Positions 839 through 32,350 of a stretch of DNA of 64,000 nucleotides are shown piece by piece. Both the position numbers and the translations under genes were made by a program. The stretch comes from Mytilus edulis (Eukaryota), in NCBI RefSeq assembly GCF_963676685.1, contig NC_092344.1, positions 48,732,001-48,796,000 of the forward strand, in the 5' to 3' direction. How positions within the stretch are numbered: the first letter of the stretch is position 1; each line of letters opens with the position of its first letter. The notes beneath the pieces were generated by a model, which was not told the origin of the DNA, ran no database searches, and worked only from the letters and a program-made list of their open reading frames with translations.

Positions 839-892
839 ACACATTTATTCAAAAACCAGTTATTGGCATGACACGGGTTATGTTCTTCTCAT

Positions 893-953
893 ATATGTTA
901 TGATGGTATGATACTAAACCTCTAACGGGAAGGATCGTGCCTGATATTCATAT
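893..953 (+). promoter_or_regulatory. Putative form-2 SECIS element downstream of the Penelope-like ORF (copy 1)
   Basis: ATGA at 900-903, helix GGTATGATACT (905-915) pairing with AGGATCGTGCC (931-941), unpaired AAA at 916-918, apical mini-stem, TGAT at 942-945, lower helix ATATG/CATAT. Confidence 0.7.
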
Positions 954-999
954 GATGAAATCATAATCTTTCTATCGGTTTAATTGAAGTCTGGAGCTG

Positions 1000-1420
1000 G
1001 CATGTCAGTTAACTGCTAGTAGTCTGTTGTTATTTATGTTTTATTGTCATTTTGTTTATTTTCTTTGGTTACATCTTCTGACATCAGACTCGGACGTCTC
1101 TTGAACTGAATTTTAAATGTGCGTATAGTTATGCGTTTACTTTTCTACATTTGCTAGAGGTATAGGGGGAGGGTTGAGATCTGGCCTTTGTTAGTCTTGT
1201 ATTATTTTAATTTTAGTTTCTTGTGTAAAATTTGGAAATTAGTATGGTGTTCATTATCACTGAACTAGGATATATTTGTTTAGGGTCCAGCTGAGTAACG
1301 CCTCCAGGTGCGGGAATTTCTTGCTACATTGAAGACCTGTTGGTGACCTTCTGCTGTTGTTTTTTCTATGGTCGCGTTGTTGTCTCTTTGACACATTCCA
1401 CATTTCCATTCTCAATTTTA
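1000..1420 (+). repeat. Dispersed repeat, probably the 3' tail of the Penelope-like element
   Basis: The same sequence occurs at about 29650-30125 (+), about 43375-43860 (-) and as a fragment at about 13610-13760. Confidence 0.65.
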
Positions 1421-2701
1421 TGCATACTATTTATTGCTAGTACATGACTTAAATATTTTTTTACTTACATCTGACAAATAAAGTCCCGTAACTCCGGAAC
1501 AACAAGCAAATCGAAAGAATTTTTTTTCGATAGGCTTTTAAATCAAATCATAAGTGACTTTAAGAAATCGTATATTGTTATGTTTATATGTTTTATTCAT
1601 CTTCCAATTTAATTTTAAATTTTAAATTTTTTATATAAAACTTTATTTTAAAGCTAGTGAATTAAATGTTGTTTCTCCTAAAACAAATGTTGTTGGAAGT
1701 ATTCGGCAGCAAGAATAAAACAAATGAAAATATAATTTCTAAATTTTATTCGACCGAGCGTTTTTTTTATAGATTTTCCTTCGTATGCACAAAGCAAACA
1801 ATGCGTGAGCCAAGTATTGAAACACGGGAAGAGTTATAGGGACCGAAAATATTTGCCAAACCACATATAAATTCAATTTTACCTGAATGAGTTGAAACCT
1901 TAGTTTCTTGATAATTTCTATATTTACATTTTAAGTAGTTTAGCAACATTTTCATTATTGAATAAAACTCCCCACTATCTGTGAGCACATCAATACGTTC
2001 AATGAAATGTAAAGAGCTTTATTTATCATGATGCGTCTAAAATTGTGATTACATATATCGGATATGAAATTTATCTTTAATACTATTCTCCTCACAGTTA
2101 AAACACGACTTCTCATGAACGCATTGCCGTTCAGACATGTACCTTCCGGGTTCCAGTTTAAGGAGAAAAAACTTACACGTATAGCGCGCAAGACGAGCAC
2201 TTCTGTGTCATCTCTATTCTTCGAATCAGCATTGAACACCTTGCCCCATGTCGCAGGACAATTTTCCATTGTTTAACGCAACAGACCGGTGTATTAGATT
2301 TTAAGACTGGTACCTTTGATAACTATTCTTTCCCTTCGCCGAAATTTTCATGATTAATGTACATCATCAATAAATTTGTATCCACATCTTAATTGTATAT
2401 AGTTATCAAAGGTACCAGGATTATATATTTCTTGGATAAGTGTTTTTAATACTCGTTGAATTCAACTTTTTTTTGATAGATTAATGTAAATTGATGAACT
2501 GAAGTAATATTCTATCTAGTGTATTTAAAAATTTCATACTATATAATTGAGTAAAAGAGTCGAGCTAATTAAACATTAAAAACATTTACCTTTTACCTCA
2601 CTACTATTTTTGGATTCTGAATCGGTTTCGGTTTCAGTTTTGGTATCGGTTTCGGTTTCGGTATCGGCTTAGGATTTGTTCGTCAGATATGGAAGTATAT
2701 A

Positions 2702-3981
2702 TGTTACAGTGAATTTGTATAATCAGGGATTATGCAGAATCCCTATTTTTTTTAGGGATTATGTAGAATCACTAAAAACATTAGTGATTATATAGATTCC
2801 CTGAAAATGACCAGTGATTTTGTATAATCACTGATAATTTTAATTATTATTCTACACATTCCCTAATATGATTTCAGGGATTATCAATAATTAAAAGCTT
2901 CAAAGATGATATCTCAAACCAATTACACTAGTGGTTCCAGCAAGGATTTGTATAGTCTTACTATACAAATCCTTGGTTCCAGGAAAGGGAGATCCCAAAA
3001 AACTTATGGTCAATATTCACGAAAAGGCTGAAGAAGGTTATCGCCTTGCTATATAGCATGGAATCCTGCTCGGATCTTTATACAAGAAATCAGTTTGAGG
3101 TTGCTGATTTCCCTTCATTGGTACAATTCGTACCTTCAGATGTTTGTGCTGAAAACTCTATAACTCTGAGACGTGTCGTAAAATTTGATTTGATGTTGAG
3201 GACATGGTTTTTTTTTAATTTGATATCGTAGTAAAAACAGACGTGAATTGATAGATATGCCTGTAGAAAATCAGGGTAAATGTGTAATAGTCGATGCCAT
3301 TCAAATTTAATTTGTAAATAAAATGTGTAATATTAAAATATTATACATAACATTAACATTTATCAAAACGACTGAACGCATAAAAATAGTTTTAATGACA
3401 ATTTTATTTAATTTCATATTCTCAACCTAAAAACAATTGCTAAAACAATACGATAAAAAGAATAATCATTATGCAATTTAATATTTTCATACTGACTTCA
3501 TCAACCCGCCCGTGTGGGCTCGCTTGATATTATTAATACTAATACAGTCAGTATCAAAAAGGGCTCGCTTGATATTATTACTGATAAAGTCAGCATTAAA
3601 AACAAAACATCAATTATTCTGTATATATTTTGCTTATCATTTAATTATATAGTGCTTATCATTTAAATAAATTATTTTGTGTATAACATTTCAATATGTT
3701 TGTGTCTTTCATATTAATAAATTATGCCTAACGTTTTACAATATTAAGGTTATTATTATGATATATTAAGGTTAACTTTTAAGATATTTCAATATGTTAT
3801 ATATTTTAGTATCATTTCAGTTATTCTGTATAATCCCTGACGTTTTTTCTAGTGATTATACATAATCCCTGAAAGTTTTAGTGATTATATATATTCCCTA
3901 AACTAACCAGTGATTATACATAATCCCTGAAAATTTTAGGGATTCTACATAATCCCTGATTTATACAAATTCACTGTAACA
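2702..3981. mobile_element. Non-autonomous TIR transposon with TGTTA...TAACA ends (Ginger-like), inserted in a TA run
   Basis: Imperfect TIRs of about 130-150 bp start TGTTACAGTGAATTTGTATAA and contain ~29-bp palindromic subrepeats (AGGGATTATGTAGAATCCCT). TATA flanks both sides. The element is absent at the paralogous site near 31375. Confidence 0.8.
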
Positions 3982-5829
3982 TATATATACTGGACATCAC
4001 TTCGCGGTCATGGCAAAAGTTGCAACTGGTACTTATTTCCTATAAACAATCCTCACGCAGAGAAAAAATAAAATTCTGACTAATTGATCGACAAATTACA
4101 TGACCTGGGTATTTGATTTAAAAATCTTGAGGCTTAGACACTTACAATATTAATTTTGATAATAACCCCATGGACTATTTATTTGTCATGTCCTATATAC
4201 ATATCCGATTACATCTTCATCAAGTTCAATATATAGGTTTTTAATTGGTCATTTTTATATTTTGTTGACAAAAGATTCACAACATTTGATAAAATAAATC
4301 AACCAAAATATACGAAAAAAATCTGTTGAAGATGAAAGGAGAAGAATTCGCTAATTTATATTTTTCCTATGATTTTTTTTATCAAAAAAGTTATTATATG
4401 TAACAACTTACGACGATAAAACGACATGTTATCACGTTAATAGGTGTTCCTTGATAACCTCAAAAGTGGAGGGATCTTCTCTTGAGAGAATCTTTTTGAT
4501 CCTATAGATTAATCGTAGAACATATTCACGTCGTTGTTCATAGTTTGGATTACTTTAAACACTTAAAATGTTAATGTTTCAATTTTTTAATATTTTAATA
4601 ACATAATAGAAATGAAAACAACATATCAGGTAGCTTGGTCACTTTGTAATTTGTTATATACCTAGGTTTGACGATACTTTGTCATTTTTATTGGAAAACA
4701 ATTGTTATTTATAATGTCACGACGAAAAGGGGTACAGTTAGGGGATTGTTTTATCTAAAGTTAAAGATTTTAACTTTCTATAGCTAGCAATTGAATAAGT
4801 GCCATATGAATTTTTCACACTTTACATTTCCACAGCCAATCAATAAATGTAGATCTAAAATTGTAGATTCAGAAAGATTTTTAATATATATTACTGTACG
4901 AGTTTATGAATGGAAAAAAGGAAACTAAACAAACATCTCTCTCTCTCTCTCTCTCACACACACGACATCACCATTGACAATGGGGAAGAGGATCTTACAA
5001 GAAAATGTAAACATTATAAGTTAAATTACAATCGCAGAATAATGTAAACATGAAACAATAGTAAATAAAATATTTCTATTAGGTCAACAGATATTTATCT
5101 GTTGTTAATTTCATTATTATGTTATGTAGAACACATGTTTAATTTACAGTCATATGAAATTATTTTTTTTTTCTTACAAATAATGATGTTTTCGAAGTTG
5201 TTGAACCAATGCATGCACACATATACTTTAAGTAAGTCCTGTATTTGTTTTATCAACAGTAAAAGAACCTTATTTTAGTAATTTATTTTTTTGTGAATCA
5301 TCTTTAATCTTCTGAAATTGATTGGTAAGTGTAATATACAAAAACACAAAAACTAGTTAAACCAAAACCCGATCAGAATCCGTTAATTTTATCAGTAATC
5401 TTAGTACATTTTTCACACTTTCCAACAGCAGTTACACTTTGTTTATAAATATTGACCCTTGAAAAATATGTCACAACTGTAAGTTGTGAATGATAAAAAT
5501 ATGCAAGTGACACACTTGTAACATAAGTGTCTTTTTGACATATAGTCCCGTATTATGAACTTTTGGTATTATTGTCGGAAAGATTAGAACACGAATTGGA
5601 CAACATCTGACATCAATTGAAGTGACCTGGTTATTGCAAATCAGAAATTGTACATACTAACGAGTTTGATTTATTTATCTTTTCTCCATATTATCCCTTA
5701 CTTACTTGATGCGTTTGTCCTCATCCTTCCCAATTATTTTGTTTAGGGATTAGTTGACTAAGAAATTAAATCTTGGTCAGATGATGTAGCTCTATGAAGT
5801 GTGTCAAGAGTTTTGTGGTTAATTAAATG

Positions 5830-11897: not shown

Positions 11898-12226
11898 AAG
11901 GGAGCTACAATTTGATTTTTATGGTGGGGGGGGGGGGGGGGGGGGGGGGCTAGGATGAAATTTGAAAAAAAGGCAGGACAGGATTTTGAGTTAAAAAAAA
12001 GGCAGGATGAGTAACTTGGCAAAAAAAAAGAAGGCAGGATGACAATTGTTGTAAAAGAGTCAGGATAAGCTAAGAAAAAAAAAAGGCAGGACCGAATAGA
12101 CTGAAAAATAAAAAGGCAGGACAGAGATTACAAATAAAAAAAAGGCAGGACAGAGATTACAAATAAAAAAAAGACACAATTTTTCATCCTAACCCCCCCA
12201 TAAAAAATCAAATGGTAGCTCCATTA
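11898..12226. mobile_element. MITE, PIF/Harbinger-like, upstream of the TLR pseudogene
   Basis: TIRs GGGAGCTACAATTTGATTTTTATG / CATAAAAAATCAAATGGTAGCTCC with TAA/TTA flanks and internal AAAAAGGCAGGA repeats. Absent at the paralogous site near 52390. Confidence 0.7.
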
Positions 12227-12526
12227 AGGGCTGCGTCAGGTTTAGATAAAAAAAATTATATTGGTATCACTGTATATATTTGTTTTTATACAGATATTTT
12301 TCACGTATTCTTCAGTGATTGCTCAGGGGTTTTTTGGGTTTTTTTTTTTTAATTGAGGCACAAATCATAAAATTTTCAATAAATACTGCGTTTTTATCGT
12401 CATTTTTAAGTTAGACAGGAATCTTTTGACCTTTGATAGTTTATATATCGTATCATCAAGCAATTAAATATCTAATTAAGTGCTGGATTTAACCTTGGTA
12501 CTATTAAGTAGACTTTTTTGGAAAAC

Positions 12527-13600
12527 ATGTTGGCTTTTACTTTTTTAAAACAACATCTTTATTTGCATATGTTTCTTGTCTTCAAGACAACAAAGGAGAT
12601 TGCTCTTCACGAGGGATTAAAATTGTTTCACATGCTTTACCTCGAAATCTTACGTCACTGAACTTAAAACGAAATTCAAAAGGTACAATATCACATGGCG
12701 ATTTCCAATTTTATGGAAGATTGAGAATATCAATTTACGACAAGAACAATATTTCCTTACTGCAATCAAATGCTTTTAAAGGACTTAAACATTTAAAGCA
12801 TCTGTCCATGTCTGACAATATGCTCGATCTTAATACATCATGTGTCTCGGAATTATTCGGACCTCTGAAATCTCTAGATAGGTTTTGCATTTCAAGAAAT
12901 ATGCCAGTAGGAACCGATTTACCAGTTTATTATCTATTTTTCGGATATTTTCTTAAACTTATACATCTAGAAATGGATCTTGCTCGAAAGCCAGTGTGGA
13001 ATAAATGTGGATTGTCAAAACAGTTACGAACTTTATGTTTTAACTCCTGCTTTTTAGATAAAATAACAATTAGACCTTCGTTTTTATGCTACCATCAATA
13101 GAAAATATCTATTTTGTCGGTTGTGAGGTTCGTGAGTTGCCTGAAACTAAACTTTCTGAAACCTTTCATTTGTTGAAGATTCTTCGCTTATTCCAAGTTT
13201 ACATGGGCATTGAGCCAGCACTGAAGATAGTATATCCTTTTAAAAAATGTAATAGTTAAACTTTACAGAAATTAATTCTGGCTATTGTGATGGACTTATT
13301 AGAGCTCCTTTTGCAGTTATAATAAATGCTGATAGGGAAAAATACTTGAGAAAAGTATGTTTAAGAAAAGTAATTTTGATAAGAAATGATTTTGTAGATT
13401 TCAAGCCAAATTCTTTACTGTCTGAATGTTTTGTTACAATATTTTTTTCTGGAGACCGATTTTCAATGACAAATGGATTTAAAACAGTTTAACTGTCAAA
13501 GCTCATACTGTAGTTATCAAGTCTTGTAATTTTCAATTATTCCGGAATTCTTAGTATTTCAACTGACGAAATCAATTCAGGTTTAACGGCCAATACAGAA
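12527..13600 (+). pseudogene. Toll-like receptor pseudogene (N-terminal LRR part only)
   Basis: Colinear with 52749 to about 53855 from the ATG. It carries small deletions, frameshifts and stops. Homology ends near 13600, so LRRCT, TM and TIR are missing. Confidence 0.9.
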
Positions 13601-13988
13601 TTTTCACGGAACTAGTACGCCTTTTTATTTAGGGGTCAGCTGATATACACGTCCGCGTGCGTGGTTTTTTCGCTGCGTTAAAGACCCATTTGTGGCATTC
13701 AGCTGCTCATTTGTCTGGTTTATTTCTCTTTGACGTATTCCCTATTTTCATTCTCAATTTTACTATAATCTTTACATCAAGACCATCATGTATTTTTTGT
13801 GAAGCTGATATGGAATATTAATGAACAAGGTCTTGGTATTTTCCGATGATTTTTTTAGGAAAAGGACGATGCTCTCTTTGACATAACCCTGGTTAATTAC
13901 TTTTATGCTCAGACAATGGTAAAGTGTCATATAATATGAGTAGCAGCTGCAAGGTAAATTAGAGTGGAAAAGGGAGAGACATTTATCA

Positions 13989-15425
13989 GTGACTATTTTT
14001 ACAGACGCATCCACCTTTAAATGGGGTGGTGGCTTCGAAATTAATGACATCAAACATACTGTAGGTGATTCGTGGGTGGCAGAAATGCTTTCTCTGCCAA
14101 TTATGATTCTAGAAGCGTATGCGTTATTAAATGTTTTAAAGTCATTCAGAGACAAAATACAGGGGTTTCGAATAGATGCAAATGTCGACAACAAAGCTTT
14201 GATTTATGCGTGGGACAACGAGGGGTCAAGGTCATCTCAGTTGAATTCCGTAATAAAAGATATTTTCAAATTTACTATTGATTCGGACATTATTTTGAAC
14301 CTGTACTATATACCGTCAAAACAAAACCTCGCTGACGCGCCTTCACGTACTTTAACAAAGTGTGACGCAACAATTACGAAAGTTATATGGCAGACTATTC
14401 AAGAGCATTTCGGAGGAAATTCTGGACATACTTTAGATCTCATGGCTCTGGACTCAAATAGCATGAAAGACAAAAAAGGAAATATTCTAAAACATTTTAC
14501 ACCTTTTCAATCTCCTCTGTCCTCGGGTATAAACGTTTTCACTCAAGAGATTAACAAACAGGAAAACTGTTACGTATTTCCACCTTTCAATCTTGTTCTA
14601 CCAGTTATGACTTTTTTGAAAGAAAACAGTTGTAGTTACACGATTGTGATAAGAGCGGAGAACACTACGCCTTTATGGCTGCCTAATTTTGTCAATTTCA
14701 TAAGTGACGCATTTGTTCTAGGCATCAAAGGTCAAAAAGATGTTTTAAAGTACCCGACGAAAAAGGGCTATGTGTCTGATAGATATGGTTTACCATGGAA
14801 TTTATGGGCGGTAAGGGTGCAGAATTTTATTTCCGGTTCATCTTATGGAAAAATGCTTTTTCTAAATAACCCTACGATTGCTTCCAATTTTCATTTTTTG
14901 TGTGTCGGTGATTCAATGATCAGATTTTTTTTATCAGATAAGAAATTTAGGAACCCTATGGTACATGTTTACTCAGAAGGTGGAGGCCTTATTCGTAATG
15001 TACAGTACAATATTCAAAAGATGGTGGATAGGTATCCACCACAAACCATTTTTGTGCATGCTGGTGTGAATAATTTGAGTAAATGTTATTTGTATTTGAA
15101 TGAATTTCACCAATTATCTGTAGCACATCATGAGCTTGAATCTTTAACATTGTTGTTAGAAAACATTTGTAAGCAATTTACGCATGTAAAAGTAATAATG
15201 TCATCAATAATTATCACTAAGGACGATTACATTAATATAAGATCGGAGAGTTTAAATGCAACAATGAAACAATCATGCATAGAACATAAGTGGTTATTCA
15301 TGGACAATGTAAATATTAACAGTTCACATTTGAGGGATAATGTGCATTTGAATGAGGATGGCCAGCGTATATTGACAAACAATGTATATAGTATGTTAAA
15401 ATGTGTATCCCATGTAGGAATTTAG
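13989..15425 (+). CDS. C-terminal part of the DIRS-type pol: RNase H, adenine-methyltransferase-like domain, SGNH/GDSL hydrolase
   Basis: RNase H motifs IFTDAS, ILEAYA, VDNKA and YIPSKQNLADAPSR. Methyltransferase-like LDLMALDSN...CYVFPPF. SGNH blocks VGDSMI, GG, HAGVNN and DNVHLN. The start is not a true initiation site. Confidence 0.85.
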   Translation: MTIFTDASTFKWGGGFEINDIKHTVGDSWVAEMLSLPIMILEAYALLNVLKSFRDKIQGFRIDANVDNKALIYAWDNEGSRSSQLNSVIKDIFKFTIDSDIILNLYYIPSKQNLADAPSRTLTKCDATITKVIWQTIQEHFGGNSGHTLDLMALDSNSMKDKKGNILKHFTPFQSPLSSGINVFTQEINKQENCYVFPPFNLVLPVMTFLKENSCSYTIVIRAENTTPLWLPNFVNFISDAFVLGIKGQKDVLKYPTKKGYVSDRYGLPWNLWAVRVQNFISGSSYGKMLFLNNPTIASNFHFLCVGDSMIRFFLSDKKFRNPMVHVYSEGGGLIRNVQYNIQKMVDRYPPQTIFVHAGVNNLSKCYLYLNEFHQLSVAHHELESLTLLLENICKQFTHVKVIMSSIIITKDDYINIRSESLNATMKQSCIEHKWLFMDNVNINSSHLRDNVHLNEDGQRILTNNVYSMLKCVSHVGI

Positions 15426-15579
15426 GGGCAGTATCATGACTAGCGTTTGTTTATGTTTCTCTGTAAAAGTGTAAATATGAGTGTTTAGTTAACATTTTTG
15501 TTAATTTGTATAGTTGTAAAAAACATTTTCTTTTATTTTGTTGTAGGTTTTTAATATTGCTAATATTTTACGTCCATAC

Positions 15580-16890
15580 ATGTTATGCAAAGGATGTGCA
15601 ACAGCAAATGATGTAGACTATATTTTTTGTAAAATATGTGGTTCTCCGAGAAATAAGTCATTAGAATGTTTAGACGAATGTTCCAATGAAAGGGATCAAC
15701 TATTGCATAAAATTGAAAAACGAATTGACACACTTGACAATTTATTAAAATCGGGGAGTTATTCAAAACAGAAATGCAGTTTAAAAACCGAATTAGAGAA
15801 ATTTTTTGTTACTTTGGAACCTCTGAAAAATCTTTCTAATGCCGGTCCTGAAGACATCAGGAAATTTTTAGTATTCAAAGAAAAAAATGGCAGAACACAA
15901 CTGCACGAAGATAATTGTGTATATCGTACAGAACATGGTCTTAAAAATTGCAGTTGTCCAAAATCTCTCACAGTAAAATCGGTAGACAGTTTGTTAGGTA
16001 AAATAAGAGCAATTTTTCGAGATATTGGAAGAGCTGGCGAATGGAATCCAATGCTTTACAGTGGCAACCCGGCTTCATCTCACATCTTGAAGCAGCATAT
16101 TCAAGCAGTGTCTTTGGAGCAATCTAATTCTAATATAACAAGAAAACAAGCGACTCCTTTAATGTTCGACAAGTTAGGAAAACTATGTAGATATTTATCC
16201 TATAAAGTGTCTGTGGAAAAAGACCCTATATCACAGTTTTTATTTGCGCGTGACTTGTCTTATTTTTCTATGTTATGTCATTCAGGCAACAGGGGCGGAG
16301 ATCTTGGTTTACTTAAGGCTGAAAATTTGTTTGACATACCTGATTCAAAAGGTATTTATGTATCACAACAGGCAGGAAAAACGGCCTCAATCGACAATCC
16401 AAAAAATTATATTATCTTGCCGTCGCTAGATGAAGACATTTGTCCAATTAAACTCGTAAAGGATTACAAACGTATAGCAAGTAAAATAGATATTGATTTA
16501 AACAAGGGTTTCATTTATCGTGTTAGAGACAACAAGTCAAAACAAATTAACAATCGAGCAGTATCATCATCATGTATGACAGACCGGTTAAAGACGCATT
16601 TAATGAATATTAATTTATATCAAGGAGAAACGTCCCACAGCATCAGACGCGGTTGCGCAATTACCTTAAGAATGTTAGGAGTCGATGATCAAGCGATCAA
16701 TCAACATGTGGGCTGGAGTTCCAAGGGAATGATTGACCATTATGCACATGTTGGAAAATTAATGAGCCCCGAAGGTCCAGCAAGCACATTGTCCTCCGCT
16801 GCAAAACATTTGGGACAGGGGTCGTCTTTGTTCGATAAAGTTTCACAAAACTATGTCAGTATAAGTAATTTGAAACAGTTTAAATTTTGA
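15580..16890 (+). CDS. Tyrosine recombinase of the retrotransposon, with an N-terminal Zn ribbon
   Basis: 436-aa ORF with catalytic set NRGGDL (R), K, HSIRRG (H-x-x-R), HVGW and HY (Y). N-terminal CKGC...CKIC. Confidence 0.9.
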   Translation: MLCKGCATANDVDYIFCKICGSPRNKSLECLDECSNERDQLLHKIEKRIDTLDNLLKSGSYSKQKCSLKTELEKFFVTLEPLKNLSNAGPEDIRKFLVFKEKNGRTQLHEDNCVYRTEHGLKNCSCPKSLTVKSVDSLLGKIRAIFRDIGRAGEWNPMLYSGNPASSHILKQHIQAVSLEQSNSNITRKQATPLMFDKLGKLCRYLSYKVSVEKDPISQFLFARDLSYFSMLCHSGNRGGDLGLLKAENLFDIPDSKGIYVSQQAGKTASIDNPKNYIILPSLDEDICPIKLVKDYKRIASKIDIDLNKGFIYRVRDNKSKQINNRAVSSSCMTDRLKTHLMNINLYQGETSHSIRRGCAITLRMLGVDDQAINQHVGWSSKGMIDHYAHVGKLMSPEGPASTLSSAAKHLGQGSSLFDKVSQNYVSISNLKQFKF

Positions 16891-17162
16891 ATTTGTTTCA
16901 TAGAATTTTGTTATGAAAGCGTAAATTTTTAAAAGCACTTTTTTCAGACGTCAGGATTAATTTTCAAGGAAGGGGAAAATCTAGACAATTAATTAAGTGA
17001 CATTTTATTGTTTACTGTTTTATGTATTTTTTATATTATAAGTATTGGATAATAAATACTGTATTAAATGAGTTTAGTTTGTTTCGGTATGTTTATTATG
17101 TTACATAAAGCTGCACGGTTTTTGGTTTGTTGTTTTCCATATCTAACATATGAGAGGTACCG

Positions 17163-17200
17163 GGGTGAACTTGTAATATTCCACTATTACAAGTTCACCC
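17163..17200. other. Perfect palindrome (16-bp arms, 6-bp spacer); candidate recombinase crossover site
   Basis: GGGTGAACTTGTAATA-TTCCAC-TATTACAAGTTCACCC at the end of the first direct repeat. Confidence 0.65.
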
Positions 17201-17427
17201 TTGGGTGCCTCGAATATAAGATAACGCGGTCATCTTGTGGTCTGGTCAGTTGATTGGAGTTTGCGGTGAAGGTCATAAGCAATATGAAATATGACAAAGG
17301 CATGCCCTGTGTGTTAATTGTCATCAAGTGTGGTGAAGGTTGTTAGTAATACAACAAAGCCAGGTTTGAGGGTTTTAATGGTTGATTGCCATCGTATTAG
17401 CAGCTATAGCAGTCAGAAATGAAACGG

Positions 17428-17475
<48 letters not shown>

Positions 17476-19612
17476 ACAACTGCAAACAAACAAACAATTA
17501 CACTCAAGTTACAGGATGCAAAAACTTATACATATATCTGAGAAATCATAACGATACGTAATATGAAAAGAATATCCAAGCTTAAGGGAGGAGTAACCAG
17601 TTATTTGTGCCGTTTGTTACACAATTTTCAGAAAACAAAAAACAAAAACAAAAACAAAAACAAAAAAAACAAAAAAAAACAAAAAAACACCAATATGTAT
17701 GTTGGGTCAAGCTTGAGAACTGTGTTGTCAATAAGGTTTTATCCAATGAGTCGGTTTTTTCGTGTTTTGTAGAATCATTAGGTGTTGGGATCTATATGCA
17801 CTAATTCTAGGATATATGGAATAATCAACAGCAGTGTTGCTCCAAGTACTGATTAAACCTTATGGTAAATGTAAATGTCTTATCTGATTATTCATGGCGA
17901 TAAAAGCTTATTCATCTTCATAGCTAATAGCTGCGGGTATTAATGGTAGATTTAGATAAAAAATACATGTCATGTTGTCGTTGTTATATAACATATATAG
18001 CAATTTACAAGTAATGCTATAGTTGCTATATCCGACCAAAACAATACCAAAAATTGTTTTTCATATTGACACATATTCATTTCATTCTCAAAAATACAAA
18101 CAAAGGGATGACAGGAAAATCTAACATATCGCTAAAGATAATTTGATATGACAAACGATGTCGGGGAAGTCAGTTCGCATTATATTGATATCAGGCCACA
18201 AACCCAGCCTGTTGTACCTCTCACCTTACCGTTTTTACGGTTTGTTGTTCTCCATATCTAACATATGAGAGGTACCGGGGTGAACTTGTAATATTCCACA
18301 ATTATAAGATCACATTTACACTATAAAATATTGTTGATTCAGTCAATAAAACTTCGACGCTACTTGAAAAAATCCAGAATGTCCTAAAAAAAAACGGACA
18401 TCTTATATTTAATATAAACGCGGACTTATTCATCCGAACTACAAGTATTTCGCTAAAATTCTACAAATTAAAGGAGATGTTGATTCTATTAACGCATTGT
18501 CGTTGATTTGTACATTCGTATGTGGAAAAAAATAGTTTTATCTAACATTTCTAAGAATATATATATATATATAAGTTGTGTTACTACAAATATTTTATAA
18601 GTAATAGTTATCCCATGAGGACGCGGTGTGTCACCCCGATCACCCCGATGGCCGAATGGGATTACTATTTTACATCCCAGCTGTTTTAGATTAGACGAAA
18701 AACCATTTATAATTCATAAAATCTAGTTTAGAACGCTACACAACCATTATAATATAGTTTTACTTTATATATTACTATATAATATATACCCTTTATGACA
18801 CCCAAACACGATGTTTAAATATGAAACCATGTCAACTCGGCCAACACTACATCGCCACTTTCTACAACATCGCCCCGCTCTTGTTTACCAACTAGCCCCA
18901 CTTATGAAAAGGGTAAAATCCCAGCGAACAATCAGTCTGACAACTCGCCTTATTTATGAAAACGGTTAAAATCTCCTGAATAAAGGTCTGCCAACTCGCC
19001 CCTCTTATGAAAATATCTTGCTTCCTTTAAATATGTTAGATTACTGATATTTGGTATCCAGACGTTCTGGTGTAGGGGTGTCCGGCTCAGGTAATCCCTG
19101 GAAGAACAAAGGAGCTGGGATGTAATTACTGTTAATCACATATATCATATACCTCTTATATTTATTTTGAACGGTTGCAATTCTTACCAGTAAAACCTTT
19201 TGTTACATTATAAAAAAGAAGATGTGGTATGATATCCAATGAGACAACTATCCACAAAAAACCAAAATGACACAGACATTAACAACTATAGGTCACCGTA
19301 CGGCCTTCAACAATGAGCAAAGCCCATACCGCAAATTCAGCTATGAAAGGCCCCGATAAGACAATGTAAAACAATTCAAACGAGAAAACTAAAGGCCTAA
19401 CCAACATATTCAAAAGAAAAAACCTGGTCACATTCGAAACAAAAATTCAGTTCACTCGAGAAAAATACACGATGAAAATAGACACGTCTACACTAACCGG
19501 AAAATTGCTTTGATTTTAGCCAAAGATAGAAATTAACTGTATATTCTTGAGAGAGATTCACATTTCAGTACATAAATTCACGGTTTCCATTAAATCTGAT
19601 GTAATAATCATT

Positions 19613-20003
19613 TATTATTTTAAGTGAAAGTAAACGGATTGCTTTTATTACGTTTCAATTAGTTGAAGGCTGTATGGAAATTATTTATGACTTTATATAT
19701 TTTCAATAGAATCTAAACATTTATTATCTTTTAAAAAAAGATATCCGACACCTTCAAATCGGAGCATACTTTTAAAACAACAATTGTTTCGATCTTTCCT
19801 TTTTATCATGTTTAAATGCCGAAACTTGACGTCAAAAGTCTGACAATTGAGCACACATATTTATCTATAACAAATATATATATATAAGATAATAAATGTT
19901 TAGATTCTATTGAAAATATATAAAGTCATAAATAATTTCCATACAGCCTTCAACTAATTGAAACGTAATAAAAGCAATCCGTTTACTTTCACTTAAAATA
20001 ATA
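19613..20003. repeat. Perfect 118-bp inverted repeat with a 155-bp spacer
   Basis: 19613-19730 is the exact reverse complement of 19886-20003. Confidence 0.9.
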
Positions 20004-26334: not shown

Positions 26335-27318
26335 TTAAAGAACATTGTACTCTTAACAATAACCACAATAAACCTATTTCGCATATCAAACATAAATTAA
26401 AAGAACTAGCCAAGGAATTTGTTTTTGTCCCGGACGATAAAGCTGCTTATAATATTATAAATGATTGACGTAAATTTTACATTAAGGTTCTACAAAAAGA
26501 AGTCACCAATTCACAAATATTCCAACTGACTCCATTTTCAGAAAACGACACCTGTAACAAACATAAACTTTTAGCTACCGCTTTACAAGCAGAACCAAAA
26601 ACAATGAAAGTCCCAACTATGTGTTGGCTTCCGTAGCTACACAAAACACCATACAAATATAGATTTATTTCGTCTTCAAGCCATTGTTCCAATACTAAAT
26701 TATCTATTCCTCTTGCCAGTACACTTGGTACAATCAAAAACCTGATAATGAATTGTTCAAATGAGGCCTTCGAAAATAGTGGAATTAATTACTTTTGGAG
26801 TGTCAAAAACTCGTTGAAAGTACTTGACAAACTGCATGCTTATATTGGTGATTTTGAATCTTTTCAAAGTTTTGATTTTCTACCCTATATACCATATTGC
26901 CTCACATTCTCATTAAGAAAAAAACACACACCTAATTAAATGGGCATTTAAAAAGTTAGAATGTGAATATATATGTTCAAACTCTTTTAGGTCATTTTTA
27001 GTAGCAATAAACAAAAAAACTATGTCAATTGGACTACTTTGAAACTATATCTGCCCTTGATTTTTTTGTTCGCTTTGGAGATTCCGTATATCGCCAGGTT
27101 ATCGGAATTCCAATTGGGATTGACTGTGCACCACTTATTGCGGACCTGATTTTTGTATTGCTACGAGTTACATTTTATGACAAAAATCAGCAAAGATCCA
27201 TCGAAACAACATCTGATACACAAATTTAATAATACTTTTAGATATTTGGATGATATTTTGGATCTCAATAATGACGACTTCAGTATGTATACTAAAGAAA
27301 TTTATCCTGTTGAACTTA

Positions 27319-28949
27319 GGCCGTGTTCACACCAAACGCCGTGTAGAGTAAACATGTTTACAATTAGTTTAGTGAAGTGTGCACTGGTTTCACATTACAT
27401 TTGTTCACATCTATACACATTGTTTAGCTACCTGTACATAAGATTTGTTCTCACTTGTAAACTATGTGTCATTTAAATGTTCATTACGTAGAACTGAATT
27501 CAAAATTTTGGGACAATTTTTCTAGCGGTAAGGGAACAACCATTTGACTTCAAAAGGGGGGGTGGGGTGGGAATGGAAATATTCCGATCCCCAATTTGAT
27601 AAAAAAAAAAATGATCATACAGATCATAAAAGAAATATTCTGAATCAAAGAGTTTCCCCATACATTGTAGTGTTAAATATTGAAAAAAAATGTATTTGAT
27701 CACCAGCATCGAAAAAAAGGAATAAAAACGTACGCGCGAAAAAAAATCTTACTCAGATAAAAAAAAATAACCCTCCCCCTTTTTAAGTTAAGTGGTTACT
27801 ACTTTATGAAAGCCATTTTTATAATTTGCAGTAGTTTGAATATACTAGAGATGTCTCGATTACGCACTAGAAAACGTTAGCTGCAGCAGCGTGCTTACAG
27901 CCGAAAAAAAGGATTGAGTTATTAGGGATCTCTAAATTTTTATCTTTTCTGTTTGTTTCAAATGGTGTTTCTTCTCCAAGGAGTATTTGGTAAAAGAACA
28001 GGGTCACGTTTTTTTAAAATTTATTTTAAGGGTTATTTAACGGATTTGAGATACTAGACAAACATATCATTTACCCCACACTGTTTTTAGTCATGCATTT
28101 ATGCGTGAATCGTTGTTTGAGTAAAGACCAGTGGCAAATATTTCTATGTACGTCAAGTCGATTCGGGAAGACCTTTTCAAATGAATTAGGCAGCAACTAT
28201 TTACTTCATTTTTTAGGGAGGGAAAAGGGGGGGTAGAGGGGCGTGGGCTATTGATTTTTCCAGGACAAATTTTGGTGACAAGTCGAAATCAATTTTAGCA
28301 TTATATTTATATAGTGGCAGCTGAGGGTGAAACAAACAAATTTTTTTTCAGGGCCAAAAACTGGAAACATTTTTTGTTTCCAAAACAAAATCCATAGCTC
28401 ACCCCCCACCCCCTTGCCTTTATGTTTTATACTTAACTATAATAGCCCCACCCCCATGCCTTTATGTTTTATACTCAACTATAATAGCCCCCCTCCCCCA
28501 TGCCTTTATGTTTTATACTCAACTATAATAGCCCCCCCCCCCCCCGAAAATCAATTGGTTCCTGCCTTATGGGTTCGGCAATGATGCTGCTTTGAGTCTT
28601 GATCAGGGGTTAATAAAGTACGTGAATTTGTTTTTAACAAAAAAAAATCTGTAAAATTTAGACAACAATTTCTGTAAAGAACTATACTAATAATTATCAA
28701 AAATATCAATTTTACTCAAAAATAGTTTCCTCCTTAAATATATACACGGTAAAACTAATGTCCTAAATGCCTAGTTTTGTGTACACTTAACCTACACAAG
28801 GCCTACATTGACTATCGACTGTGTGTAGATAAAACATGATTTAAACTACATGTAAACATTGAGTTTTATCAATGGGAACGCAATTGTGTTTCGTTTACGT
28901 GTGAGTTACACTAACACAACACCGAATTTAGGTCAATGTGAACACGGCC
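27319..28949. mobile_element. Non-autonomous PIF/Harbinger-like element inserted in the RT
   Basis: 13-bp TIR GGCCGTGTTCACA. 3-bp TSD TTA at 27316-27318 and 28950-28952. It splits YPVEL|TLNKAN. Confidence 0.85.
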
Positions 28950-29541
28950 TTACTTTGAATAAAGCTAATACTAACAATGACCACTGCGCTTTCCTCGATC
29001 TTGATATCTATATCATTAACGGAAAGCTTAATACTAAAATTTACGATAAAAGAGATGATTTCTCAATTCCTTAGGTTAATTATCTATTTTTTTATGGTGA
29101 CATTCCCTTGTACGATTCGCTCGTGTATGTAACAATGTTTTAGATTTTAATGAGAGAAATTTATGTATTACTGAAAAATTATTACACCAGGGTTTTCGAT
29201 ATCACACACTAGTCAAAACAATTACTAAATTTTATCATCGGTATAAGGACATCATTCGTAAATATAGCTCAACATGCAGACTTCTTATACGTTCAGGTAT
29301 TTCACATCCAATATTTTATGGAAATATTCTTTAGAAAGCACAAAAATGTCAGTATTCACCTCAGAAGCTAACAAAACCTTTAAATAGACTTATTTAGAAG
29401 GGATATAGTTACGATACTGTTGTCAGGTCATTAAAGATTGCATATTTTGGCGTTGATTCACTTGTAGGGTCTTTGCATCGGAACTAAAAACATTTATTCA
29501 AAAACCAGTTATTGGCATGACACGGGTTATGTTCTTCTCAT

Positions 29542-29602
29542 ATAAGTTATGATGGCATAATACTAAATCTCTAACGGGAAGGATTGTGCCTGATGTTCAT
29601 AT
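29542..29602 (+). promoter_or_regulatory. Putative form-2 SECIS element (copy 2)
   Basis: ATGA at 29549-29552, helix GGCATAATACT pairing with AGGATTGTGCC, AAA at 29565-29567, TGAT at 29591-29594. The helix differences from copy 1 preserve pairing. Confidence 0.7.
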
Positions 29603-32350
29603 GATGAAATCATAATCTTTCAATCGGTTTAATTGAAGTCTGGAGCTGGCATGTCAGTTAACTGCTAGTAGTCTGTTGCTATTTATGTATTATTGTCATT
29701 TTGTTTATTTTCTTTGGTAACATCTTGGTGACATCAGACTCGGACGTCTCTTGAACTGAATTTTAAATGTGCGTATAGTTATGCGTTTACTTTTCTACAT
29801 TTGCTAGAGGTATAGGGAGAGGGTTGAGATCTCACAAACATGTTACCCCGCCGCATTTTTGCGCCTGTCCCCAGTCAGGAGCTTCTGGCCTTTGTTAGTC
29901 TTGTATTATTCTAATTCTAGTTTCTTGTGTACAATTTGGAAATTAGTATGGTGTTCATTATCACTGAACTAGTATATATTTGTTTAGGGGCCAGCTGAGT
30001 AACGCCTCCGGGTGCGGGAATTTCTTGCTACATTGAAGACCTGTTGGTGAGCTTCTGCTGTTGTTTTTTCTATGGTCGGATTGTTGTCTCTTTGACACAT
30101 TCCCCATTTCCATCCTCAATTTTATACATACTATTGCTAGTACATGACTTAAATATTTTTTACTTACATCTGACAAATAAAGTCCCGTAACTCCGGAACA
30201 ACAAGCAAATCGAAAGAATTATTTTTCGATAGGCTTTTAAATCGATTCATAAGTGACTTTAAGAAATCGTATATTGTTATGTTTATATGTTTTATTCATC
30301 TTCCAATTTAATTTTCAATTTTCAATTTTGTATATAAAACTTTATTTTAAAGCTAATGAATTAAATGCTGTTTCTCCTAAAACAAATGTTGTTGGAAGTA
30401 CTCGGCAGCAAGAAGAAAACAAATGGAAATTTTATTCGACCGAGCGTTTTTTTATAGATTTTCCTTCGTATGCACAAAGCAAACAATATTTGAGCCAAGT
30501 ATTGAAACACGGGAAGAGTTATAGGGACCGAAAATATTTGCCAAACCACATATAAATTCAATTTTACCTGAATGAGTTGAAACCTTAGTTTCTTGATAAT
30601 TTCTATAATTACATTTTAAGTAGTTTAGCAACATTTTCATTATTGAATAAAACTCCTCACTATCTGTGAGCACATCAATACGTTCAATGAAATGTAAAGA
30701 GCTGTATTTATCATGATGCGTCTAAAATTGTGTTTACATATATCGGACATGAAATTTATCTTTTATACTATTCTCCTCACAGTTAAAACATGACTTCTCA
30801 TGAACGCATTGCCGTTCAGACATGTACCTTCCGGGTTACATTTTAAGGAGAAAAAACCTACACGTATAGCGCTCAAGACGAGCACTTCTATGTCATCTCT
30901 ATTCTTCGAATCAGCATTTAACACCTTACCCCATGTCGCAGGACAATTTTCCATTGTTTAACGCAACAGACCGGTGTATTAAATTTTAAGACTGTTACCT
31001 TTGATAACTATTCTTTCCATTCGCCGAAATTTTCATGATTAATGTACATCATCAATAAATTTGTATCCACATCTTAATTGTATATAGTTACCAGGATTAT
31101 ATATTTCTTGGATAAGTGTTTTTAATACTCGTTGAATTCAACTTTTTTTTGATAGACTAATGTAAATTGATGAACTGAAGTAATATTCTATCTAGTGTAT
31201 TTAAAAATTTCATACAATATAATTGAGTAAAAGAGTCGAGCTAATTAGACATTAAAAACATTTACCTTTTACCTCACTACTATTTTTGGATTCTGAATCG
31301 GTTCCGGTTTCAGTTTTGGTATCGGTTTTGGTTTCAGTATTGGCTGAGGATTTGTTTGTCAGATATGGAAGTATATATATATACTGGACATTACTTCGCA
31401 AATTTTCGGAGTTATCTCCTGTAAAAAATCCTCACGCAGAGAAAAAATAAAATTCTGACTAATTGATCGACAAATTACATACATGAACTGGGTAATATGT
31501 GATTAACAAATATTGAGGCTAAGACACTTATAATCTTAATTTTGATAATGAGCCTATGGACTGCTTATTTGTCATGTCCTATATACATATCCGATCACAT
31601 CTTCCGTTGTCTTCATTAAGTTCAATATATAGGTTTTTAACTGGTCATTGTTATATTTTGTTGACAAAAGATTCACAACATTTGATACAATAAATCAACC
31701 AAAATATACTAAAAAAATCTGTTGAAGATAAAAGGAGAAGAATTCGCTAATTTATATTTATCCCATGATTTTTTTTTATCAAAAATATTATTATATGTAA
31801 CAACTTACGACGATTAAACGACATGTTATCACGTGAATACATGTTCCTATATAACCTCAAAAGTGGAGGGATCTTCTCTTGAGAGAATCTTTTTGATCCT
31901 ATAGATTAATCGTAGAACATATTTCACGTCGTTGTTTATAGTTTGGATTGCTTTGAACACTTAAAATGTTAATGTTTCAATTTTTTAATATTTTAATAAC
32001 ACTATAGAAATGAAAACAACATATCAGGTATCTTGGTCACTTTTTAATTTGTTATATACGTAGGTTTGATGATACTTTGTCATTTTTATTGGAAAACAAT
32101 TGTTATTTATAATGCCATGACGAAAAGGGGTACAGTTAGGGGATTGTTTTATCTAAAGTTAAAGATTTCAACTCTCTATATCTAGCAGGCATCATGTAGT
32201 CTCTTAAATAAATTATTTTTGGGGAAAAAAAATAATATATCTATATTTTAATTGCTAATATCTAGAGAGTTGAATAAATGCTATATGAATTTTTCACACA
32301 GTCAATAAATAAATGTAGATGTAAAATTGTAGATTCAGAAAGTTTACAAA

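What the first reader, a model, noticed from the sequence alone, without database searches (positions are those of the whole stretch)
17124..18313. loxP-like site in the tyrosine-recombinase retrotransposon, with a flank that mimics the missing arm
Seen in sequence: a perfect 16-6-16 palindrome lies at 17163-17200. The second direct repeat (18239-18299) reproduces the left arm and the TTCCAC core, then continues AATTATAAGATCAC, which matches 11 of 14 bases of the right arm TATTACAAGTTCAC, before similarity ends. Established: tyrosine recombinases act on inverted arms around a 6-8 bp asymmetric core, and split-direct-repeat elements carry an internal copy of the circle junction. Inference: the internal palindrome is the attP-like site, and the element integrated into a genomic pseudo-site. 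That would define a compact animal recombinase/site pair, and the recombinase ORF here is intact.
Basis: partly seen in the sequence, partly recalled or inferred. Interest (0 to 1): 0.8.

Follow-up and report, generated by a model that had tools for sequence, protein, structure and literature searches.

The report
Mussel retrotransposon recombination site and target mimic
A mussel jumping gene that uses a Cre-like recombinase carries a perfect loxP-style 16-6-16 site, and a matching uninterrupted locus shows it inserted next to host DNA that resembles one arm of that site. This gives a concrete enzyme/site pair to test for a class of elements whose integration has never been studied biochemically.

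Summary
Window 17163-17200 is a perfect 16-6-16 palindrome (spacer TTCCAC). The repeat at 18239-18299 copies the left arm and spacer. The next 14 bases match the right arm at 11 of 14.

The element (about 13954-18299) is a 5'-truncated retrotransposon of the DIRS order with split direct repeats. Its 436-aa recombinase ORF is intact, keeps all catalytic residues and folds like Cre.

Other copies start at the right arm and end at TTCCAC. The palindrome is therefore the internal copy of the circle junction.

A paralogous empty site 30 kb upstream, and joined contigs in four public runs, read ...CAAGTTA|AATTATAAGATCAC. The arm-like flank is therefore host DNA that was there before insertion.

Thirteen other insertions also have arm-like 3' flanks (TAT first, then scattered matches; P about 0.0005). 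The 5' flanks share only AC. The target is a half-site, not a full pseudo-site.

A distant family (31% identical recombinase) has an 8-6-8 site cut at the same spacer edge.

The window copy's left junction is not canonical. It lies inside the pol gene and uses a 10-of-11 microhomology.

The element type is known. Function is untested.

The parts
13954..18299 (+). Inserted 5'-truncated copy of the retrotransposon (4.3 kb of a roughly 9.3 kb element). Bases 13951-13953 (AAG) could belong to either the flank or the element.
   Evidence: The empty paralogue L034 joins window 13961 to 18300 with a 5-nt overlap. Window 13951 corresponds to position 5339 of the full-length C5 copy (L031 6339). All four runs contain contigs that skip 13956->18300.
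13951..13961 (+). Left junction, made by microhomology. The target reads AAGTTAAATTA and the element's internal sequence reads AAGGTAAATTA (10 of 11). The window has the element's G at 13954. The target bases TTA are missing.
   Evidence: The full-length copy reads ...GGGAAGGTAAATTAGAG at this internal position.
13989..15425 (+). C-terminal part of the pol ORF (after the RT domain), ending in a GDSL/SGNH-hydrolase-like domain. The gag and RT parts are missing from this copy.
   Evidence: Pfam Lipase_GDSL_2 E=3e-4, below its cut-off. The full-length copy has a 930-aa ORF with RVT_1 and GDSL, and a gag ORF with a zinc knuckle.
15580..16890 (+). Intact tyrosine recombinase ORF, 436 aa: N-terminal zinc ribbon, ALOG domain, catalytic domain.
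   Evidence: Pfam ALOG_dom 9.5e-18 and Phage_integrase 29.2 bits (cut-off 27.1). R238, K267, H353, R356 and Y388 are invariant and W379 nearly invariant across 45 homologues. The model has pLDDT 89.9 and its best PDB match is Cre-loxP (E 4e-11, TM 0.76).
17124..17184 (+). Repeat B1 (61 nt), ending with the left arm and spacer.
   Evidence: It equals 18239-18299 with one mismatch.
17163..17200 (.). Perfect 16-6-16 palindrome: left arm 17163-17178, asymmetric spacer TTCCAC 17179-17184, right arm 17185-17200. It is the internal copy of the circle junction and the proposed recombination site.
   Evidence: The 5' ends of other copies begin at the right arm and their 3' ends stop at TTCCAC.
17183..17267 (+). 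Repeat A2 (85 nt). It is 100% identical to the 5'-terminal A1 of the C5 and C11 copies.
17268..18238 (+). Non-coding element DNA between A2 and B2, with a poly(A) run at 17428-17475 and A-rich repeats at 17636-17690.
   Evidence: It is 96% identical to C14:16815282-16816209 and 82% identical to the C5 copy.
18239..18299 (+). [quoted passage not shown]
18300..18313 (+). Host target half-site AATTATAAGATCAC, matching the right arm at 11 of 14.
   Evidence: It is present unchanged in the empty paralogue and in the joined contigs of four runs.

Best explanation
The palindrome is the recombination site of a tyrosine-recombinase retrotransposon. The element belongs to the DIRS order, has an ALOG-type recombinase, and has split direct repeats arranged A1-[gag, pol, YR]-B1-A2-(about 970 bp)-B2. 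Joining the 3' end (...left arm-TTCCAC) to the 5' end (right arm...) in a circular DNA copy would recreate exactly the sequence kept internally at B1|A2.

The two 16-bp arms are inferred to be binding sites for two monomers of the Cre-like recombinase. The asymmetric 6-bp spacer gives the site its direction.

In integrated copies both element/host junctions fall at one phosphodiester, between TTCCAC and TATTAC. On the bottom strand this is the arm/spacer boundary, where tyrosine recombinases normally cut.

The host target is not a full second site. It is a half-site resembling the last two spacer bases plus the first 11-14 bases of the right arm (AC^TAT-T-a/c-c-A-A-g-T-T). I infer that a recombinase monomer binds there and cuts next to it. 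Because integrated copies always carry the bottom-strand arrangement, only the bottom-strand exchange may be completed by the enzyme, with the rest resolved by the host.

The window copy fits this as a half-finished event. Its right end is joined precisely at TTCCAC^ to such a half-site. Its left end was joined inside the pol gene through a 10-of-11 microhomology, with loss of 3 target bases.

Shown here: the site, the repeat architecture, the junction positions, the empty site, the flank bias, and the intact Cre-like enzyme. Inferred: binding, cleavage position, order of strand exchange, and the circular intermediate.
For: The palindrome and repeats are.

Junction positions. Eleven independent 5' junctions begin at TATT(A/C)CAAGTT and are preceded by AC in 9-10 of 11. 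Fourteen independent 3' junctions end at TTCCAC (one at TTTCAC).

Empty site. L034 is 98.1% and 96.9% identical to the two flanks and contiguous across the insertion point. Contigs skipping 13956->18300 occur in all four runs. In the three runs X2, X3 and X6 the joined form accounts for all contig depth at the flank variant positions and carries its own SNPs, so it is not simply the paralogue.

Flank bias. Positions 1-3 are T, A, T in 13, 11 and 12 of 14 copies. Positions 4-16 match the family's own right arm 68 of 182 times against a null of 45 +/- 5.7. Leaving out the window copy gives 58 of 143 against 37.4 +/- 5.1, P = 0.0004. Matches after the first mismatch number 51 of 128 against 33.8 expected, P = 6e-4.

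Distant family (recombinase 31% identical). Its site is TGAGGATA-TGGTCA-TAACCTCA. Seven 3' ends stop at ...GGTCA and fourteen 5' ends start exactly at TAACCTCA.

Enzyme. It has ALOG and Phage_integrase domains, invariant R-K-H-R-(W)-Y, and Cre as the best structural match across both domains.

The C5 copy has a deletion joining an internal AC^TAT pseudo-site to the site.
Against: No biochemical evidence exists. The samples are small: 14 3' flanks and 11 5' flanks from two close subfamilies. The distant family shows only marginal arm-likeness (32 of 98 against 24.5, P = 0.049) and no AC-type preference.

The only verified empty site belongs to a copy whose left junction is not canonical, so a complete canonical integration was not checked against its own empty site (searches found none).

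In the sister subfamily the arms are only 11 of 16 complementary. In Dictyostelium DIRS-1 most extrachromosomal cDNA is linear and single-stranded (PMC7192593), so a duplex circle may not be the substrate.
Confidence: 0.72

Rival explanations
1. Only the short junction motif matters, as in the published trinucleotide model for DIRS elements. The longer arm likeness of the window's flank would then be coincidence.
For: The strongest flank signal is TAT at positions 1-3. Published models invoke a 3-bp sequence shared by the circle junction and the target (PMC3266345, PMC7192593). Several flanks (L004, L009, L016) show no likeness beyond position 3.
Against: Positions 4-14 are still enriched when the window copy is left out (P = 0.0004), and so are positions after the first mismatch (P = 6e-4). 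A match of 11 of 14 occurs at only 1.7e-4 of window 14-mers. The window's own flank lacks the T of TAT.
Confidence: 0.15
2. The arm-like flank reflects base pairing rather than protein recognition. In this view a cDNA or circle-junction strand anneals to partly homologous host DNA, and host repair or template switching completes the insertion.
For: The left junction of the window copy clearly used a 10-of-11 microhomology. Contiguous matches next to the junction reach 5-7 nt in some copies. DIRS-1 cDNA is mostly single-stranded and linear (PMC7192593).
Against: The 3' boundary is the same phosphodiester in 14 of 14 copies whatever the homology, including the window copy, which has a mismatch at position 1. 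Annealing-based joins would scatter within the homology. The similarity is dispersed, not only contiguous. The boundary coincides with the spacer edge of an inverted-arm site in two unrelated families.
Confidence: 0.13
3. The palindrome acts as a hairpin in single-stranded cDNA or RNA rather than as a duplex loxP-like site. It could serve priming, circle closure, or a folded recombinase substrate.
For: Folded as single-stranded DNA, the junction region gives -22.4 kcal/mol (z = -7.9). The related family folds over the whole 86 nt (z = -5.7). Single-stranded intermediates are documented for DIRS-1. Earlier notes of this scan (s1-834042, s1-832299) propose folded-strand recombinase substrates in this genome's Cryptons; I did not test that.
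Against: Differences between the two subfamilies are not compensatory. The same left/right mismatches are kept in both families. That fits two similar protein sites better than a stem under selection. A hairpin of arm against arm gives one duplex arm, not the two-arm geometry of a Cre-like dimer. The distant family folds only weakly (z = -2.9).
Confidence: 0.12
4. The bases after 18299 are element DNA, or the remnant of an older copy into which this one nested.
For: BLAST alignments of some copies ran 3-11 bases past 18299.
Against: The empty site carries the same bases with no element next to them. Other copies diverge immediately after TTCCAC apart from the TAT bias. There is no similarity to the element beyond 14 nt.
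Confidence: 0.02

Closest known systems
ALOG-type DIRS1-class retroposons (Iyer & Aravind 2012, PMC3537659)
   Same: Both are about 9 kb. Both have gag with a zinc knuckle, RT/RNase H, and a recombinase built as zinc ribbon + ALOG domain + catalytic domain. The class has been reported in molluscs.
   Different: Here pol ends in a GDSL/SGNH-hydrolase-like domain. The inactive methylase described for that class was not confirmed. That paper does not describe a recombination site or any target preference.
Ngaro / PAT-like elements with split direct repeats (A1-[ORFs]-B1A2B2)
   Same: A1 = A2 (85 bp) and B1 = B2 (61 bp), with the internal B1|A2 junction downstream of the recombinase. Some Ngaro also carry an SGNH hydrolase (PMC9210276, PMC8547959).
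   Different: About 970 bp of unique DNA lies between A2 and B2. The hydrolase is fused into pol ahead of the recombinase instead of being a separate ORF after it. The element ends are also imperfect inverted repeats of about 40 bp, which is not part of the published description.
Cre/loxP and Flp/FRT simple tyrosine-recombinase sites
   Same: The site has inverted arms around a short asymmetric spacer (16-6-16 against 13-8-13 for loxP). The enzyme's best structural match is Cre across both domains. The full catalytic residue set is present.
   Different: Cre recombines two full sites with identical spacers. Here the target is a half-site sharing at most 2 spacer bases, and both junctions map to a single spacer edge. 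Activity is untested.
Trinucleotide circle-junction model for DIRS1-like integration (Poulter & Goodwin 2005, as cited in PMC7192593 and PMC3266345)
   Same: There is no target-site duplication. A short sequence at the junction (here AC^TAT) recurs at insertion sites.
   Different: The preference extends about 11 more bases into an arm-like half-site and lies on one side only. The distant family shows no shared junction bases at all.
Single-strand-exchange tyrosine-recombinase systems (integron attI x attC, CTX phage with XerCD) - functional analogy only
   Same: In those systems products carry the arrangement of one exchanged strand, and the targets need little homology in the overlap region. 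This comparison rests on my own knowledge of those systems.
   Different: Nothing here shows that the substrate is single-stranded or that replication resolves a Holliday junction.

Membership tests
Tyrosine recombinase (Phage_integrase, PF00589) | Profile match above the curated cut-off | tested here: met
   29.2 bits against a cut-off of 27.1, residues 316-391.
Tyrosine recombinase (Phage_integrase, PF00589) | Catalytic R-K-H-R-(H/W)-Y set | tested here: met
   R238, K267, H353, R356 and Y388 are invariant and W379 is at least 90% conserved in a 45-sequence alignment that includes the window ORF.
Tyrosine recombinase (Phage_integrase, PF00589) | Two-domain C-clamp fold | tested here: met
   The model has pLDDT 89.9. 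Cre-loxP complexes are the top hits, with E 4e-11, TM 0.76 and 355 aligned columns.
ALOG-type DIRS1-class retroposon | Recombinase with an ALOG N-terminal DNA-binding domain and a zinc ribbon | tested here: met
   ALOG_dom E 9.5e-18. It matches the LSH3 ALOG structure 8p5q. A CxxC...CxxC motif is visible at residues 3-20 of the ORF.
ALOG-type DIRS1-class retroposon | gag with zinc knuckle, RT/RNase H, and an (inactive) methylase upstream of the recombinase | tested here: inconclusive
   zf-CCHC and RVT_1 were found in the full-length C5 copy. No methylase profile hit was obtained, and the Atlas look-up of the middle of pol was unavailable.
Ngaro / split-direct-repeat elements | A1 ... B1 A2 B2 with A1 = A2 and B1 = B2 | tested here: met
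   A is 85 bp and 100% identical between the copies compared. B is 61 bp with 1 mismatch. Unlike the textbook layout, about 970 bp separate A2 from B2.
Ngaro / split-direct-repeat elements | No methyltransferase domain | tested here: inconclusive
   There is no Pfam hit, but about 200 residues of pol between RNase H and GDSL remain unassigned.
loxP/FRT-type simple recombination site | Inverted recombinase-binding arms around a 6-8 bp asymmetric spacer | tested here: met
   A perfect 16-6-16 site. The sister family has imperfect 16-bp arms (11 of 16 complementary, core 10 of 12) with the same spacer. The distant family has 8-6-8.
loxP/FRT-type simple recombination site | Strand exchange at both spacer edges between two sites with matching spacers | tested here: not met
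   Both junctions map to the right spacer edge only. Targets share at most AC with the spacer, and no left-arm likeness is seen.
loxP/FRT-type simple recombination site | The recombinase binds and cleaves the site | not testable with these tools
   This needs an EMSA, a cleavage assay or a recombination assay.
DIRS trinucleotide-junction integration model | The same 3-bp sequence at the circle junction and in the target, with no target duplication | tested here: inconclusive
   AC^TAT is preferred in the two close subfamilies. The distant family shares no bases. The one verified empty site lacks the motif.

The most novel reading that the evidence does not exclude
Retrotransposon recombinases of this class may integrate by a one-sided reaction. 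A Cre-like enzyme bound to a full two-arm site on the element would pair with a single arm-like half-site in the host. It would exchange only the bottom (minus, cDNA-sense) strand at the arm/spacer boundary and leave the other end to host replication or repair. The window copy, with a precise right end and a microhomology-repaired truncated left end, would then be a natural trapped intermediate of that reaction. If true, this would give the first defined site and target rule for a eukaryotic retrotransposon tyrosine recombinase, and a compact animal enzyme/38-bp-site pair that needs only about 14 bp of target likeness.
Probability: 0.3. Interest if true: 0.75.

Novelty: new variant of a known kind. 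Interest (0 to 1): 0.58.

Why it matters
Tyrosine-recombinase retrotransposons are widespread in animals, fungi and protists. How they integrate rests on a 1985 model and on a proposed 3-bp junction rule. A recent experimental paper states that the recombinase's specificity has never been tested (PMC7192593).

This locus supplies what such a test needs:
- an intact, Cre-like recombinase gene with all catalytic residues;
- an exact 38-bp candidate site;
- a verified pre-insertion target;
- a specific prediction: cleavage at the spacer/right-arm edge, and half-site targets that mimic the arm.

If confirmed, it would explain target choice in this order of elements. It would also add an animal-derived recombinase/site pair to the small set of simple site-specific recombination systems.

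Tried and rejected
- Flank as element DNA or remnant of an older copy: rejected by the empty site.
- Contiguous microhomology alone as the cause of the flank bias: rejected, because matches remain enriched after the first mismatch.
- Selected hairpin: no compensatory changes between subfamilies. It is kept only as a minor rival.
- Empty alleles of two full-length copies (C5, C12), searched through their left flanks: only repeats and the loci themselves came back.
Only two 3-kb pieces were obtained, and one of them (L084) showed no clear repeats.
- The primary papers Goodwin & Poulter 2004 and Poulter & Goodwin 2005 are not held. Their content is cited only second-hand. I cannot exclude that they mention short inverted repeats at split-direct-repeat junctions.
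- The Atlas look-up for a methylase-like part of pol was unavailable.
- Plant ALOG proteins bind YACTGTW (PMC10927535). The arm motif AACTTGTAA resembles this only loosely, so I draw no conclusion.
- Logan contigs cannot separate allele from paralogue in the source sample (X1). Only the three other runs argue that the insertion is absent there.
Full report
**Observation.** Window 17163-17200 reads left arm GGGTGAACTTGTAATA, spacer TTCCAC, right arm TATTACAAGTTCACCC. This is a perfect 16-6-16 inverted repeat. The repeat finder reports 17119-17198 and 18234-18313 as direct repeats (93% over 80 nt). It also reports a longer imperfect inverted repeat of 39 nt per side around the same centre. The true repeat unit (B) is 17124-17184 = 18239-18299, with one mismatch. 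After the second TTCCAC the sequence is AATTATAAGATCAC, which matches the right arm at 11 of 14. Only 1.7e-4 of the window's 14-mers match that well.

**What the element is.** ORF 15580-16890 (436 aa) carries an ALOG domain (E 9.5e-18) and a Phage_integrase catalytic domain above Pfam's cut-off. Its ALOG part matches the solved plant ALOG structure 8p5q. The protein has 1558 relatives at E <= 1e-3 among 1.84 billion cluster representatives.
- In an alignment of 45 near-full-length relatives, R238, K267, H353, R356 and Y388 are invariant and W379 nearly so. The window ORF therefore has the complete catalytic set.
- The predicted structure (pLDDT 89.9, pTM 0.79) is closest to Cre in Cre-loxP complexes across both domains (E 4e-11, TM 0.76).
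- A full-length relative on contig C5 (L031) shows the architecture: an 85-bp A1 at the 5' end identical to A2, a gag ORF with a zinc knuckle, a 930-aa pol with RVT_1 and a GDSL-like C-terminus, then the recombinase.
- This matches the ALOG-type DIRS1-class retroposons that Iyer and Aravind reported in molluscs (PMC3537659). It also matches the split-direct-repeat layout of Ngaro and PAT elements (PMC9210276, PMC8547959). The difference is about 970 bp of unique DNA between A2 and B2.
- The genome is a 1.37-Gb assembly with 14 large contigs. I did not verify the species.

**The palindrome is the circle junction.**
- 3' ends: in the own-genome searches, 14 independent 3' ends from two close subfamilies (recombinases 63% identical) all stop at ...GTAATA-TTCCAC (one at TTTCAC). 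Unrelated DNA follows.
- 5' ends: eleven independent 5' junctions all start at TATT(A/C)CAAGTT, the right arm.
- Joining a 3' end to a 5' end therefore reproduces the internal B1|A2 sequence. That is the classical logic of the internal circle-junction copy in this order of elements (PMC7192593, PMC3266345).
- The sister subfamily keeps the same spacer but its arms are only 11 of 16 complementary. Its left/right differences are the same ones seen in the window's family further out. There is thus no compensatory change. This fits two similar protein-binding half-sites better than a stem under selection.

**Empty site.** A stretch 30 kb upstream on the same chromosome (L034, G000:C1:48712000-48716000) is 98.1% identical to window 12209-13961 and 96.9% identical to window 18300-19213. 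The two matches abut with a 5-nt overlap.
- It reads ...GCAGCTGCAAGTTA|AATTATAAGATCACATTTACAC. The arm-like 14 bases were therefore host DNA before the insertion.
- Laying Logan contigs of four public runs on 13700-18600 shows a contig that skips 13956->18300 in every run.
- In the three runs that are not the likely source sample (X2, X3, X6), the joined form accounts for all contig depth at the variant positions listed across 18300-18540. It carries SNPs that differ from both the window and the paralogue.
- The insertion therefore appears absent in those animals, and the empty state is ancestral.

**The window copy is truncated and its left junction is not canonical.** Window 13951 aligns to position 5339 of the full-length copy, so gag and RT are missing.
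- At the left junction the target AAGTTAAATTA and the element's internal AAGGTAAATTA share 10 of 11 bases. The window has the element's G at 13954. The target bases TTA are absent.
- This is a microhomology join, not a site-specific one.
- The right junction is exactly TTCCAC^AATTAT, with no shared base on either side.

**Is there a target rule?** Among the 14 independent 3' flanks, positions 1-3 are T, A, T in 13, 11 and 12 copies.
- Positions 4-16 match the family's own right arm 68 of 182 times against a null of 45 +/- 5.7 (0 of 5000 random draws).
- Without the window copy, positions 4-14 give 58 of 143 against 37.4 +/- 5.1 (P = 0.0004).
- Counting only positions after each flank's first mismatch still gives 51 of 128 against 33.8 expected (P = 6e-4). 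The likeness is dispersed, not just contiguous microhomology.
- On the 5' side only the last two flank bases are conserved (A 10 of 11, C 9 of 11). These equal the last two spacer bases. There is no left-arm likeness.
- The empty site likewise shows no match to the left arm.
- The preferred target is therefore about AC^TAT plus an arm-like tail. That is a half-site, not a full pseudo-site.

**A distant family shows the same geometry.** An element whose recombinase is 31% identical has 74-nt B repeats 585 nt apart. At B1's end the sequence is TGAGGATA-TGGTCA-TAACCTCA, an 8-6-8 arrangement with 7 of 8 arm complementarity.
- Seven B2 ends stop at ...GGTCA.
- Fourteen 5' ends begin exactly at TAACCTCA after unrelated flanks.
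- Both junctions again lie at the right edge of a 6-bp spacer, with no duplication and no shared core.
- Arm likeness of its 3' flanks is marginal (32 of 98 against 24.5 +/- 4.1, P = 0.049).

**Mechanism (inference).** Tyrosine recombinases cut each strand at the arm/spacer boundary, leaving the 3' phosphate on the arm side. This is established for Cre, lambda Int and Xer, and I state it from my own knowledge.
- The observed crossover, TTCCAC^TATTAC on the top strand, is that boundary for the bottom strand next to the right arm.
- A monomer bound to a right-arm-like host half-site could make the matching cut, which explains why only that side of the target looks like the site.
- If both strands were exchanged across unlike spacers, half of the products should carry the spacer at the element's 5' end. 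None of 25 5' ends does.
- The products therefore carry the bottom-strand arrangement only. This suggests a single enzymatic strand exchange completed by the host, or a strand-biased substrate.
- On this reading the window copy looks like an event in which the second end was repaired by microhomology.
- A deletion in the C5 copy joins an internal ...AAAAC^TAT... pseudo-site to the site. That fits recombinase action on pseudo-sites, though a 5-nt microhomology would explain it equally well.

**Rivals.**
- Chance, or a pure trinucleotide rule, is disfavoured by the statistics above.
- Annealing-guided insertion is disfavoured by the invariant cut position.
- A hairpin role cannot be excluded. 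The region folds strongly as single-stranded DNA (z = -7.9, -5.7 and -2.9 in the three families), and single-stranded cDNA is documented for DIRS-1.
- The reading of the flank as element DNA is refuted.

**Novelty.** The element class, the split direct repeats and the idea of an internal circle junction are known. In the searchable literature I found the 3-bp junction model. I found no description of an arm-spacer-arm site, of a single cut position at the spacer edge, or of half-site mimicry. PMC7192593 states that the recombinase's specificity has not been examined experimentally. The founding papers are not held, so priority cannot be settled here. Word searches of this scan's notes returned only Crypton hairpin findings on other DNA.

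Noticed in passing
window 12209-13961 and 18300-19213; G000:C1:48712173-48714834 (L034): A tandem segmental duplication about 30 kb apart (97-98% identity) provides the empty site. Window 1-4500 is likewise repeated at 26837-31923 (93-99%).
   Followed up: partly
window 12721-13101: An ORF with leucine-rich repeats (LRR_8, E 5.6e-5) lies in the host DNA just upstream of the insertion. The element may sit in or beside an LRR gene.
   Followed up: no
L031 9237 (G000:C5, about 44225617); corresponds to window 16855-17184: The otherwise full-length C5 copy lacks B1. The end of the recombinase gene (...CAAAAC) is joined directly to the right arm at an internal AC^TAT pseudo-site. Its recombinase ORF is also cut to 293 aa.
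   Followed up: partly
G000:C9:49418461-49419319 (L021, L072): A solo unit of about 860 bp consisting only of A-spacer-B with canonical flanks (...AGAC|TATTCC... and ...TTCCAC|TACTAG). It is the expected product of recombination between the 5' end and the internal junction, analogous to a solo LTR.
   Followed up: no
window 17183-17267: The 85-bp A repeat is 100% identical between the window, C5 and C11 copies, although the rest of these copies is only 82-96% identical. This suggests strong constraint or conversion.
   Followed up: no
window 17138-17266 (run X2, table 5c): One contig from a gill-metagenome run joins the end of A (17266) back to B (17138) with 9 other letters between. This would fit a compact B1-A2-B2 variant lacking the ~970-bp spacer.
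   Followed up: no
window 17140-17223; L010 1520-1605: Beyond the 16-bp arms, both sides of the junction carry a conserved inverted motif (AT..GAGG.ACC). Integrated elements therefore have imperfect terminal inverted repeats of about 40 bp. This may be a second protein-binding site.
   Followed up: partly
window 17428-17475 and 17636-17690: A 48-nt poly(A) run and A-rich short repeats lie inside the element's non-coding 3' region, between A2 and B2.
   Followed up: no
window 19616-19742 / 19874-20000: A 127-nt inverted repeat (96% complementary, 131 nt apart) lies downstream of the insertion, like a foldback element or MITE.
   Followed up: no
G000:C14:16822675-16822810 (+) and 16826025-16826160 (-): Two B2 ends of the same family face each other 3.2 kb apart with identical flanks. 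This looks like an inverted duplication of an insertion site.
   Followed up: no
window 17167-17176 (arm core AACTTGTAA): The arm core loosely resembles the YACTGTW motif bound by plant ALOG domains (PMC10927535). The distant family's left arm contains CACTGAG. This is a lead only.
   Followed up: no
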